From Salpingoeca rosetta (taxonomy: Eukaryota; Protista; Choanoflagellata), in the NCBI GenBank assembly GCA_033442325.1, contig JAWQFM010000001.1, forward strand, positions 265,376 through 329,375: 64,000 nucleotides of DNA, read 5' to 3'. Below, piece by piece: positions 1,338 through 4,300 of this stretch. Under the pieces are notes generated by a model. That model searched no databases, was not told the DNA's origin, and saw only the letters and a list, made by a program, of their open reading frames with translations. Every line of letters starts with the position of its first letter. Position 1 is the stretch's first letter. Position numbers and translations under genes: made by a program.

Positions 1338-4300
1338 TTACTTGCGCAAGCAGAGCTTCTTGCCCGACGGCCCCGTGGTCACGGGATGGGAGCAGTAATA
1401 ATCAATCAGCTCAGGTAAGCTCTCAAACTTCTGCTTGACAAACAACTTGTACAGCGTGCGGTTGTCGCTGGTGATGCTGGGCGTCACGAGACCGTTCCAA
1501 ATCTTGTTGTTCTCAGACACCATTGCAATGGCATAGCATCTGCACGCGCGCAAGAGCACCGAGAACAACAACACAAAGCAGGTGTGGGTAAGAAGAAGAG
1601 GGCGTCGGGGAGTGGAGAAGAGCATGTGAGAGGACTGCCACATGAATACCACAAGCACAGAAACGCAGAAAGATACAGCCACGAGCACACACGCACAAAC
1701 ACAAACACAAGCACAAGCACAAGAAGACAAGCACAAGAAGACCCGCACGAAGGCAGGCACACAACCACCACCACCACCACCACCACCATCATCATCGCCA
1801 CGCACGTACCCTGGCTGACTGGAGGACTCGCGGACAAAGAAGGTGCCGACGGGCTTCCCGCGGAGGTTCCTGGCTGCCTCCTCACGTGGGAGATCGGGGC
1901 GGTACCACGCATAGTCAAACAGCGCCGGGCGACGCACAAGCGGGTCCTCCACAACCTTGGCAGAGCCCTGCTCGCCGCCAAAGTAGCCGTCGTTGAGGAA
2001 GGAGAAGTTGCGGAAGACGCCCTGGTCAATGTTGGCAATCGCGTACGGGTCTGCCGGGGACAGGCGCGTGTCTGCTTCTGTAAACTCGGGATCGAAGCAG
2101 TCTGCGTTGCGGGGATCATTCACGCGCGGCACGTACGGCGGCTTCACCTCGCGCTTCTCCAGCTTCGCCCAGTCGATAATCTTGAAGAAGGGGTGTGCCT
2201 TGACATCCTGCTGGCCAGAAGGGCCGCAGCCGAGGCGGTGGCGCGGGTCACGCGTCAACAGGCTGTCCACAAACGCCTTGCAGTCTGCAGACAACCGCGA
2301 GGGAAACTCCACCTTGTGGTGCAGAATCTGGTCAAAGAGCTCCTCCTCATCATCGCCCTCAAACGGCGAGTCGCCAACAAGCATCTCGTACACGAGCACG
2401 CCCAGCGACCAAAAGTCGACAGACGCGCCGTAGGGCAGCTCGCGGATGATCTCCGGTGCAAGGTAGCCGGGGGTGCCGCAGAAGGTGGTTGTTGTACCCG
2501 CACCCCAAATGTTCTCCTTACACATGCCGAAATCAGCAATCTTGATGTGGCCATCCTGGTAGGAGGAGGGGAGGTGCAAGGGAGAGATGCCATGAGGAGG
2601 GGAAACATAAACAACGCGAGTGAGTGTGAAAAAAAAGAGTCTCGGAACCGAAGTACGCCGGCTCCACAAGCACGCTAACGCATCCTTGCGAACGAATGGT
2701 GAAGCCCACACACGCACAAACACGCACGCACACAGACAGGGCACTGTCGCGACCACACACACACACACACACACACACAACTGAGTCAACTTACGCCAGC
2801 GAGCATGACGTTGTCAAGCTTGAGATCACGGTACAGGACGCCATGGCTGTGCATGTACCAGAGGCCAAGGCAAATCTCGCCTGCAGCAAAACCGGAGGCA
2901 GGGGCGACAGCACACAGGTGAGCACATCGGTTGTGCGTGAGCGTGTGTTTGCATGTGCTGCACGAAGCACACACGAACAAGGCTGTGACTCATCACACAA
3001 GCAAGCAAGCACAAACACAAGCACACGCACACAAACATGAAAACACTCACGCACACATACACGCACACACAAAGAGTCGCGTGGACGTGCACACCCGAGT
3101 GTGTACCTGCGTAAAAGGCGGTTTGCTCGTAGCTGAAGCGCTTGAGCTTCTGGATGTGGAACATGAGGTCACCACCGGTGACAAACTCCATGACAAAGTA
3201 GAGGTGCTCTGGGGTCTGGAAGGAGGCGACGAGGGTGGTCAGGAACGGGCAGCGGCTGGCCATGGCGAGCACGCTCCGCTCCGTCATGGTGCAGTCCACA
3301 TCGTCATCCTCAACAACCACCTCTTTCTTCAACACCTGCAGGCATCGAAAGGGGAGCCACGTATCAAAACAAGAAGGGGGCGGGGGCGGGAAAGAGAAGG
3401 GTGTGCGTGTGTGAGTGTGTGAGTGTGTGTGTGTGTTCCCAGCAGGGATGCATTAGACTAAACACGGACAACGAAAAAGACATGTGCGTCGCAAACAAGC
3501 AGGAGATGACACTGGGGGAGGCAGAGAGGCGCACCTTGACAGCGTACACGTCACGTGACTTTTTGTGTTCCGCCATCAGCACCTTACCGAAGCTACCTTG
3601 CCCAAGCACCTGCACCAAACATCGTCACACACACAAAAAAAAAAAGGCCATGAGCTGGCAGCTAGGCGCCTGCACCATTATGAACACAGCCGTCCCCACA
3701 CACAAACACATACGAACCCAGGCATATCCACATCCACGCACAAAATACACGCACACTCTTTCTCTTGTCTACGCCGTCACACACATAAACACCAGCAAAC
3801 ATAAGCACAGCGTCAACGTACTTTGAGGTATGTGAAGGTTGACTGGTCGACTTTGCCAAAGTCCTTGGCAGCTGATTGGGTTTTGGAGAGGGTTTGCGCA
3901 CGTGATTCACTCTTGGCAGGCTCCTGGGCAGGGGCGGGCGCGGGTTTGGCTCTGCTTGGCGCCGGCGGCATCTTTGCTTGTCTGTTGTTGTTTGTTGGTG
4001 TGTGATGATGTGAGGCGCACGCGCGTGTGTCGAACGGCATGACCACGACACGGCAGCACAGACCCACGACAAGCAGGGGCAACCGCACAACCGGGAAATG
4101 GCTGCATTCCTGGTGACAGACACACGCCCACACATGCCCACATACATACACATACACATCACGCGCACCCGCCCACACATGACGCGCACCCACCCACACA
4201 CCCACACCCACACACATACACACGCACGCCCACACTTACGCTTGTTGGCCGCCCTTGCGCACGCTGACTTGAGTGTCATCCTTGACCTTTGGCCTGAAGG

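What the first reader, a model, noticed from the sequence alone, without database searches (positions are those of the whole stretch)
1338..1910. Ser/Thr kinase (PKC) fused to a C-terminal SH2 domain
After the AGC hydrophobic motif (FRNFSF), the same exon continues in frame into [33 protein letters not shown], and a GT-AG intron joins it to CYAIAMV...[11 protein letters not shown]. The pTyr-binding Arg (FFVRES) is intact. Animal PKCs have no SH2 domain, so this would couple phosphotyrosine docking directly to PKC-type Ser/Thr output.
Basis: partly seen in the sequence, partly recalled or inferred. Interest (0 to 1): 0.78.

Follow-up and report, generated by a model that had tools for sequence, protein, structure and literature searches.

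The report
PKC-like kinase with C-terminal SH2
A single-celled relative of animals (a choanoflagellate) makes one mRNA for a protein kinase C-type enzyme that lacks the usual lipid-sensing C1 domains and ends in a phosphotyrosine-reading SH2 domain; the design is real and shared by many choanoflagellates, but similar sequences are already in public databases and its function is untested.

Summary
On the minus strand, a seven-exon coding gene (4925..1338, 727 codons, six GT-AG introns) encodes these parts in order:
- a pseudosubstrate-like motif
- a C2 domain
- an AGC kinase closest to conventional PKC
- the AGC tail, with turn and hydrophobic motifs
- after about 30 residues, an SH2 domain split by a 270-nt intron (1809..1540)

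A spliced RNA contig joins window 1810 directly to 1539 and lacks all six coding introns.

More than 40 protein clusters have the same C2 + kinase + tail + SH2 layout, and none has a C1 domain. All the named ones are choanoflagellates of both orders, including a Monosiga brevicollis protein deposited as "Protein kinase C". Their transcripts read across the same junction. The two phosphate-binding arginines of the SH2 are invariant (44/44).

It is not a canonical PKC. It has no C1 domains, and four of the five Ca2+ ligands in C2 are replaced. My best reading is a PKC-derived kinase targeted or activated by phosphotyrosine docking. That step is inferred, not shown.

Novelty is moderate: the family is catalogued but, as far as I could search, undescribed. 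Two other agents' notes in this scan report SH2 fusions elsewhere in this genome and name it Salpingoeca rosetta.

The parts
5211..5542 (-). Non-coding first exon (5'UTR). RNA 5' ends pile up at about 5541-5542.
   Evidence: depth in bins 5217-5558 and molecule ends at 5541/5542. The loose end of contig X7 after 4930 matches the window at 5211.
4931..5210 (-). Intron in the 5'UTR
   Evidence: Zero depth in 5046-5216. Acceptor AG at 4932-4931 and the contig jump 4930->5211.
4240..4925 (-). Coding exon 1. ATG at 4925-4923. Holds a conserved N-terminal helical stretch, a pseudosubstrate-like motif (aa 63-73, 4707-4739) and the C2 domain.
   Evidence: tblastn of orthologue P0001 residues 1-223 maps to 4925-4257 at 74% identity. 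Open frame and GTAAGT donor at 4239.
4335..4655 (-). C2 domain (about aa 91-197), PKC/synaptotagmin type. Ca2+ ligands D187, D246, D248 and D254 of PKC-beta are N, E, S and Q here.
   Evidence: Pfam C2, 81.8 bits. 33% identity to the PKC-beta C2. PDB hits to C2 domains of PKC gamma, beta and alpha.
3822..3981 (-). Coding exon 2: Pro/Ala/Lys-rich linker and the start of the kinase domain
   Evidence: RNA contig pieces 3820-3981. Boundaries and frame. No Pfam family.
3535..3609 (-). Coding exon 3: glycine-rich loop (GQGSFG) and the ATP-anchoring lysine (AVK)
   Evidence: Raw-read joints 3332/3532 and 3607/3820 with CT..AC ends. Translation.
3107..3335 (-). Coding exon 4: kinase N-lobe, helix C and hinge
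   Evidence: Raw-read joints. tblastn 84% identity to P0001.
2795..2880 (-). Coding exon 5: catalytic loop (YRDLKLDN)
   Evidence: Raw-read joint 2879/3106. Translation.
1810..2555 (-). Coding exon 6. Holds DFG (2532-2534), activation-loop Thr436 (2484-2486), the kinase C-lobe, the AGC tail with turn-motif Ser578 (2058-2060) and hydrophobic motif FRNFSF (1998-2015), a linker of about 30 residues, and the first half of SH2.
   Evidence: Pfam Pkinase, Pkinase_C and SH2 on this exon alone. PDB ranking places PKC-beta first. Coordinates.
1810..1907 (-). SH2 first half (W629 to G661). AlphaA2 Arg636 is at 1884-1886, betaB5 Arg654 at 1830-1832 and betaB7 Ser656 at 1824-1826.
   Evidence: Pfam SH2 profile positions 1-33, 24.3 bits. 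These residues are invariant or nearly so in the family.
1540..1809 (-). Intron 6: 270 nt, GT-AG, a multiple of three and stop-free. It splits the SH2 after its BC loop.
   Evidence: for ends and length. Removed in RNA contig X13 record 1. Orthologue gene predictions break or read through at the same point.
1338..1539 (-). Coding exon 7: SH2 second half (to about 1380), a short C-terminal tail and the stop codon at 1340-1338
   Evidence: tblastn P0001 residues 667-732 maps to 1538-1341 at 71% identity. RNA contig piece 954-1539.
651..1337 (-). 3'UTR of about 650-690 nt. Its end is uncertain because of a microsatellite at 647-681.
   Evidence: The RNA contig is continuous over 651-1539. Depth is 105-130x in one orientation.

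Best explanation
This is an expressed choanoflagellate gene for a 727-residue kinase derived from the conventional-PKC lineage.

What it keeps:
- a pseudosubstrate-like motif
- a C2 domain
- a catalytically complete AGC kinase
- the three priming sites: activation-loop Thr, turn motif and hydrophobic motif

What it has changed:
- It has no C1 domains, so no diacylglycerol sensor.
- Most Ca2+ ligands of C2 are replaced.
- It carries an SH2 domain on a flexible linker after the hydrophobic motif.

Shown here: gene structure, splicing, strand, domain content, conserved pocket residues, and conservation of the layout across choanoflagellates.

Inferred: the SH2 binds phosphotyrosine on partners phosphorylated by the many choanoflagellate tyrosine kinases. 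That would bring the kinase to those complexes or membranes, where pseudosubstrate release lets it phosphorylate Ser/Thr targets. Phosphotyrosine would then take the place of diacylglycerol and Ca2+ as the targeting or activating input.
For: - Gene model: seven open coding exons, six GT-AG introns, 2184 nt.
- Splicing: a spliced 2860-nt RNA contig covers all exons and joins 1810 to 1539. Raw reads are strand-specific and depth is near zero in the other introns.
- Domains: Pfam finds C2, Pkinase, Pkinase_C and SH2. No C1 is found in any exon.
- Kinase affinity: the C-lobe plus tail scores PKC-beta 247 bits, PKC-alpha 226-230, PKN2 199, PKC-theta 198, PKC-iota 179, Akt 170.
- Catalytic motifs [20 protein letters not shown] and APE, and sites T436, S578 and S597, are all present.
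- Family: more than 40 clusters share C2 + kinase + SH2 and none has PF00130. Animal cPKCs have PF00130 and no SH2.
- Named relatives: Hartaetosiga, Salpingoeca infusionum, Salpingoeca urceolata, Choanoeca, Helgoeca, Stephanoeca, Diaphanoeca and Monosiga.
- SH2 pocket: alphaA2 Arg 44/44, betaB5 Arg 44/44, betaB7 Ser 43/44.
- SH2 fold: the orthologue model has pLDDT 95, and its best structural matches are the Gads, Src and Grb2 SH2 domains at TM 0.74-0.85.
- Linker: in the full-length orthologue model, residues 613-624 between tail and SH2 have pLDDT under 50, as expected for a tethered module.
- Tree: built on kinase C-lobe plus tail only, one branch separates SH2-bearing rows from C1-bearing rows.
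Against: - No binding or activity data exist.
- The betaD4 histidine that packs on the phosphotyrosine ring in most SH2 domains aligns to a proline (TPS) in 35 of 44 members. Affinity and specificity cannot be assumed.
- The full-length model has pTM 0.75. That could mean fixed inter-domain contacts, and so a role for the SH2 in cis. I could not inspect coordinates or PAE.
- The pseudosubstrate assignment rests on a short motif match by eye (FARR-AFRQ here against FARKGALRQ in PKC-beta).
- The raw-read junction row for 1539/1810 was not reported.
- The branch separating SH2 from C1 kinases has SH-aLRT 89 only, and the tree has no nPKC or aPKC outgroup.
Confidence: 0.62

Rival explanations
1. 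The SH2 works mainly in cis. It would pack on the kinase N-lobe or tail to stabilise or inhibit the kinase, as the SH2 domains of Fes/Abl or Src do. Alternatively it would bind a phosphotyrosine within the same protein. In either case it would not dock to other proteins.
For: - The SH2 follows the hydrophobic motif by only about 30 residues. From general AGC-kinase knowledge, that motif docks on the N-lobe, so the SH2 is held near the N-lobe.
- The full-length orthologue model has a rather high pTM of 0.75 for a multi-domain protein with 99 disordered residues.
Against: - The family alignment has no invariant tyrosine outside the folded domains (one search lists only Y407, Y450, Y461 and Y714). 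There is no conserved internal docking site.
- The tail-SH2 linker is predicted disordered and varies in length and sequence.
- The strictly conserved phosphate-binding arginines argue for a phospho-ligand.
Confidence: 0.2
2. The SH2 fold is kept but reads something other than phosphotyrosine. Candidates are phosphoserine/threonine (as in Spt6), a lipid headgroup, or an unphosphorylated peptide.
For: - BetaD4 His is replaced by Pro in most members, and betaD6 is variable.
- Reviews note that some SH2 domains bind unphosphorylated ligands and that the Spt6 SH2 reads phosphoserine (PMC3507883).
Against: - AlphaA2 Arg, betaB5 Arg and betaB7 Ser are all conserved.
- The closest sequence and structure matches are classical phosphotyrosine-binding SH2 domains: SHP2, Crk, Gads, Grb2 and Src.
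- Choanoflagellates have very large tyrosine-kinase repertoires (PMC4342544).
Confidence: 0.12
3. The fusion is an artefact. The SH2 would belong to a separate downstream gene, or the exon would only rarely be joined to the kinase.
For: The raw-read joint at 1539/1810 was not listed by read laying.
Against: - One spliced contig spans exon 1 to the 3'UTR.
- The first half of the SH2 lies in the same exon and frame as the kinase tail.
- Transcriptome-derived orthologues from at least eight species have the same continuous protein.
- Depth falls across the intron and rises again in exon 7.
Confidence: 0.02

Closest known systems
Conventional protein kinase C (PKC alpha/beta/gamma) of animals
   Same: - The kinase C-lobe and tail are most similar to PKC-beta and PKC-alpha.
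- The full-length orthologue model best matches full-length PKC-beta (8SE1, 8SE2, 3PFQ) over about 535 columns at 42-43% identity.
- The C2 lies before the kinase, as in cPKC.
- It has a pseudosubstrate-like motif with Ala at the phospho-acceptor place, plus the activation-loop Thr, turn motif and hydrophobic motif.
   Different: - It has no C1A/C1B. The pseudosubstrate-like motif runs straight into C2.
- Four of five Ca2+ ligands of C2 are replaced.
- It has a C-terminal SH2, which no listed animal PKC has.
Choanoflagellate C2-kinase-SH2 proteins already in public collections, e.g. Monosiga brevicollis MONBRDRAFT_39232 (P0047) and EukProt transcripts of Hartaetosiga gracilis (P0001), Salpingoeca infusionum (P0002) and Choanoeca flexa (P0004)
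   Same: - Same domain order, same junction and same conserved SH2 pocket.
- 72-79% identity to the nearest ones over exon 6.
   Different: - The Monosiga protein is only 48% identical. On the tree it groups with a second S. infusionum copy (P0028), so it may be a paralogue rather than the orthologue.
- I found no published description of the family.
Dictyostelium Shk1-5 and Acanthamoeba Ser/Thr kinases with SH2 domains
   Same: They are non-tyrosine-kinase-group kinases that carry an SH2. The Shk1 SH2 is needed for membrane localisation (PMC1420674; PMC4342544).
   Different: Those kinases belong to the TKL group and arose independently in Amoebozoa. This one is an AGC/PKC-type kinase in the sister group of animals.
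PKC-delta/theta C2 domain as a phosphotyrosine-binding module
   Same: It links phosphotyrosine docking directly to a PKC. CDCP1 recruits PKC-delta through phosphotyrosine-dependent binding of its C2 (abstract of PMC5448658).
   Different: Here it is a canonical SH2 fold appended to the C-terminus.

Membership tests
SH2 domain (Pfam PF00017) | Profile match above the curated cut-off | tested here: met
   24.3 bits (cut-off 21) on exon 6 alone, which covers only profile positions 1-33. 38.9 bits when the genomic frame is read through the stop-free intron. Exon 7 alone scores nothing.
SH2 domain (Pfam PF00017) | SH2 fold: central sheet flanked by two helices | tested here: met
   Tested on orthologue P0003:347-455, whose SH2 differs from the window's at about 10 of 99 positions by my reading of the alignment. 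It was not tested on the joined window protein. pLDDT 95. The 50 listed Foldseek matches are SH2 domains or SH2-containing proteins, with TM up to 0.85.
SH2 domain (Pfam PF00017) | Phosphate-binding betaB5 Arg (FLVRES) and alphaA2 Arg | tested here: met
   R654 and R636 in the window. Both are 44/44 in the family. BetaB5 aligns to R32 of the SHP2 N-SH2.
SH2 domain (Pfam PF00017) | BetaD4 His contacting the phosphotyrosine ring | tested here: not met
   The HMMER alignment to the SHP2 N-SH2 puts Pro (TPS) opposite His53. Pro is found in 35/44 members. This residue is common but not obligatory in SH2 domains (my own knowledge).
SH2 domain (Pfam PF00017) | Binds phosphotyrosine peptides | not testable with these tools
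   Needs a binding assay with an R654K control.
Conventional PKC | AGC kinase domain of PKC type with activation-loop, turn and hydrophobic motifs | tested here: met
   PKC-beta and PKC-alpha are the top PDB matches. Pkinase_C scores 36.2 bits. T436, S578 and FRNFSF are present.
Conventional PKC | Tandem C1 domains (diacylglycerol/phorbol ester binding) | tested here: not met
   No PF00130 in exon 1, exon 2 or exon 6. The spliced RNA contig leaves no room for further exons. No SH2-bearing relative has PF00130 or a C1 Cys/His pattern.
Conventional PKC | Ca2+-binding C2 with five acidic ligands | tested here: not met
   The C2 fold is present (81.8 bits). In the alignment to PKC-beta, D187 is N, D246 is E, D248 is S and D254 is Q. 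Only D193 is kept.
Conventional PKC | N-terminal pseudosubstrate | tested here: inconclusive
   The motif at aa 63-73 has basic residues around an Ala and resembles the PKC-beta pseudosubstrate. The match is short and was judged by eye. It is conserved in orthologues.
Dictyostelium Shk-type SH2 kinases | TKL-group kinase domain | tested here: not met
   The kinase is AGC/PKC type.

The most novel reading that the evidence does not exclude
A phosphotyrosine-gated PKC. In the common ancestor of choanoflagellates, a conventional-PKC gene lost its diacylglycerol and Ca2+ sensors and gained an SH2. Tyrosine kinases would then switch on PKC-type Ser/Thr signalling directly. That would bypass the animal relay of receptor tyrosine kinase, then SH2-bearing PLC-gamma, then diacylglycerol/Ca2+, then PKC.
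Probability: 0.3. Interest if true: 0.6.

Novelty: new variant of a known kind. Interest (0 to 1): 0.42.

Why it matters
Choanoflagellates are the closest living relatives of animals and have very large phosphotyrosine toolkits whose wiring is almost unknown. A PKC-type kinase carrying an SH2 in place of C1 domains suggests a direct link from tyrosine to Ser/Thr phosphorylation.

The layout is kept in both choanoflagellate orders, which argues that it is functional. It can be tested in a species in which genome editing is, to my knowledge, established.

It also gives a natural experiment on how PKC autoinhibition and targeting can be rebuilt with a different input module. The gain is limited because unusual SH2 combinations are already a known theme in these genomes, and the sequences are public.

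Tried and rejected
I asked for the part beside it, as the tool advised.
- **Literature.** Nine searches found no open paper that names a PKC-SH2 or AGC-SH2 kinase in choanoflagellates. The papers most likely to list it are not held: Manning 2008, the ids I tried for Pincus 2008 and Liu 2011, and King 2008. I cannot exclude that it is mentioned there.
- **Second word search** on the tail plus SH2 of P0001 returned only six close relatives and added nothing on distribution.
- **The window's own protein** never appeared at 100% identity in either search. I could not see how it is annotated.
- **N-terminal conserved helices** (aa about 10-50) gave no significant Pfam match. The best was SHOCT-like at E=0.0098, below the cut-off.
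- **Exhaustive representative search and ESM Atlas** were not run.
- Exons were searched by reference, and whole-domain folding used the stored orthologues P0003 and P0001.
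Full report

The feature lies on the minus strand. The longest open frame there (1338..2789) reads from the kinase C-lobe through the AGC hydrophobic motif FRNFSF into a WYRPD...FFVRES stretch. It then crosses 90 low-complexity codons and continues as CYAIAMV...LIDYY up to a stop at 1340-1338.

Pfam on the exon alone (window:1812-2555:-) finds Pkinase (103 bits), Pkinase_C (36.2 bits) and the first 33 positions of SH2 (24.3 bits, cut-off 21). With the genomic frame read through, SH2 reaches 38.9 bits.

The 90 codons are an intron, 1809..1540. It is 270 nt with GTACGT...GTGCAG ends. Its length is a multiple of three and it has no stop, which is why the frame stays open. 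The split codon GG|A gives Gly, so the spliced reading is ...SSSQPG|CYAIAMV....

**2. Gene model and expression**

tblastn with the closest full-length relative, contig pieces and raw-read joints together give seven coding exons:

| Exon | Window coordinates |
|---|---|
| 1 | 4925-4240 |
| 2 | 3981-3822 |
| 3 | 3609-3535 |
| 4 | 3335-3107 |
| 5 | 2880-2795 |
| 6 | 2555-1810 |
| 7 | 1539-1338 |

- Together they make 2184 nt, or 727 codons. All six introns are GT-AG and every exon is open.
- A non-coding first exon (5211 to about 5542) is joined to 4930, five bases before the ATG.
- In run X13, one 2860-nt contig carries all the coding exons without their introns. It places window 1810 and 1539 at adjacent record positions (1971/1972). 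That is direct evidence that the two SH2 halves are joined on the same RNA as the kinase.
- Stranded raw RNA reads of two 2026 runs lie almost wholly in one orientation. Their joints have CT..AC ends on the plus strand, so the RNA is minus-strand.
- Introns 3336-3506 and 4020-4190 have depth near zero.
- The residual depth inside intron 6 comes from reads with loose ends at 1693 and 1723, meaning a short repeat shared with another locus.
- Depth over the SH2 exon and 3'UTR is 105-130x, so transcripts do not stop before the SH2.
- One caveat: the raw-read joint 1539/1810 was not listed, because the tool dropped rows next to the repeat at 1753-1803.

Exons were searched by reference.

**3. What the protein is**

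- **Catalytic residues.** All are present: [20 protein letters not shown] and APE. So are the three AGC priming sites: activation-loop T436, turn-motif S578 and hydrophobic-motif S597.
- **Kinase affinity.** Against solved structures, exon 6 scores PKC-beta 247 bits, PKC-alpha 226-230, PKN2 199, PKC-theta 198, PKC-eta 195, PKC-iota 179 and Akt 170. The kinase belongs with the conventional PKCs.
- **C2 domain.** Exon 1 carries a C2 (81.8 bits) that is 33% identical to the PKC-beta C2. Four of the five Ca2+ ligands are replaced: D187 by N, D246 by E, D248 by S and D254 by Q.
- **Pseudosubstrate.** Just before C2 lies a basic motif around an alanine (aa 63-73) that resembles the PKC pseudosubstrate.
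- **No C1.** No C1 domain is found in any exon, and the spliced RNA leaves no room for one.

So this is a PKC-derived kinase rather than a canonical PKC.

**4. The SH2**

- The two arginines that hold the phosphate are present: alphaA2 R636 and betaB5 R654. So is betaB7 Ser.
- In 44 family sequences these three positions are 44/44, 44/44 and 43/44.
- By sequence, the nearest solved SH2 domains are SHP2, Crk and p85.
- An AlphaFold model of the SH2 of orthologue P0003, made with a 39-sequence family alignment, has pLDDT 95. It matches the Gads, Src and Grb2 SH2 domains at TM 0.74-0.85.
- One usual pocket residue, betaD4 His, aligns to Pro. Binding strength and specificity remain open.

**5. Relatives**

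A word-based search with exon 6 returned more than 40 clusters with Pfam C2 + Pkinase + Pkinase_C + SH2, and none of them has C1. Below them come animal conventional PKCs, which have C1 and no SH2.

The named SH2-bearing relatives are all choanoflagellates of both orders:
- Hartaetosiga gracilis (79% identity)
- Salpingoeca infusionum (two copies)
- Choanoeca flexa
- Salpingoeca urceolata
- Helgoeca nana
- Stephanoeca diplocostata
- Diaphanoeca grandis
- Monosiga brevicollis MONBRDRAFT_39232, named 'Protein kinase C' by UniRef

Further points:
- Their transcript-derived proteins read straight across the same junction.
- Several gene predictions from genomic contigs break or read through at exactly this point. 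The intron position is therefore old.
- On a tree built from the kinase C-lobe and tail only, one branch (SH-aLRT 89) separates all SH2-bearing rows from the C1-bearing rows. The window groups with Hartaetosiga, S. infusionum and Choanoeca.
- The tree has no nPKC or aPKC outgroup, so a single origin is consistent with the data but not proven.
- Other agents' notes call this genome Salpingoeca rosetta. The relatives fit that name, but I did not verify it.

**6. Full-length model**

The orthologue P0001, folded with a 29-sequence alignment, gives pLDDT 81 and pTM 0.75. The C2-kinase linker (214-274) and the tail-SH2 linker (613-624) are predicted disordered. Its best structural matches are full-length PKC-beta entries over about 535 columns, but with a different domain arrangement. 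I could not inspect coordinates.

**7. How it most likely works**

- **Shown:** one mRNA, one protein, a complete kinase and a conserved SH2 pocket on a flexible tether, with no C1 and a Ca2+-poor C2.
- **Inferred:** the SH2 docks on phosphotyrosine sites made by the abundant choanoflagellate tyrosine kinases and thereby places, and perhaps opens, the kinase. I give this about 0.6.
- **Rivals:** a role in cis on the kinase itself (0.2), a ligand other than phosphotyrosine (0.12), and an artefact (0.02).

**8. Known or new?**

- SH2 domains on non-tyrosine kinases are known from Dictyostelium Shk1-5 and from Acanthamoeba (PMC1420674; PMC4342544).
- Monosiga is noted for exceptionally diverse SH2 architectures (PMC4342544).
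- Animal PKC-delta reads phosphotyrosine through its C2 (PMC5448658).
- I found no open paper that describes a PKC-SH2 kinase. The 2008 Monosiga kinome papers were not available to me.
- The sequences themselves are public.

I therefore rate it as a variant of a known kind. It is catalogued but undescribed, and of moderate interest.

Noticed in passing
window 4776-4898 (aa about 10-50 of the protein): A helical N-terminal stretch ([13 protein letters not shown]...IDEAI) is strongly conserved before the pseudosubstrate-like motif in all close relatives. It has no significant Pfam match. In the orthologue model pLDDT is about 78-84 over aa 11-30 and falls to 65-71 by aa 50.
   Followed up: partly
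window 4329-4655: The C2 domain has lost four of five Ca2+ ligands, and relatives differ at these sites too. It keeps part of the lysine-rich patch (KATKKKS).
   Followed up: partly
window 1540-1809; P0005, P0006, P0007, P0010: The intron that splits the SH2 after ...QPG sits at the same place in other choanoflagellates. In the window (270 nt) and in P0005 (an in-frame insert at the same point) it is in frame and stop-free. Gene callers therefore read through it, or truncate the protein there.
   Followed up: partly
tree; P0002 and P0028: Salpingoeca infusionum has two C2-kinase-SH2 genes. The Monosiga brevicollis protein groups with the second one. The family therefore has at least two old paralogue groups, and this genome may hold a second copy elsewhere.
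   Followed up: no
window 647-681 and 1693-1723: These short stretches attract many RNA reads with loose ends on both sides, so the reads come from other loci that share the repeat. The apparent A>G differences at 660, 669 and 1705 come from those reads and are not editing.
   Followed up: partly
window 3645 -> 2715: A 'goes back 931' joint with one to four A between the sides appears in 9-17 reads of both RNA runs. It may be a template-switch artefact or a repeat.
   Followed up: no
window 7653-14327 (-): A very long open frame (2224 codons) lies on the same strand upstream of this gene. It is rich in low-complexity Ser/Ala/His/Gln runs.
   Followed up: no
window about 16267-16660: A run of N (assembly gap) explains the GC dip in the composition profile.
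   Followed up: yes
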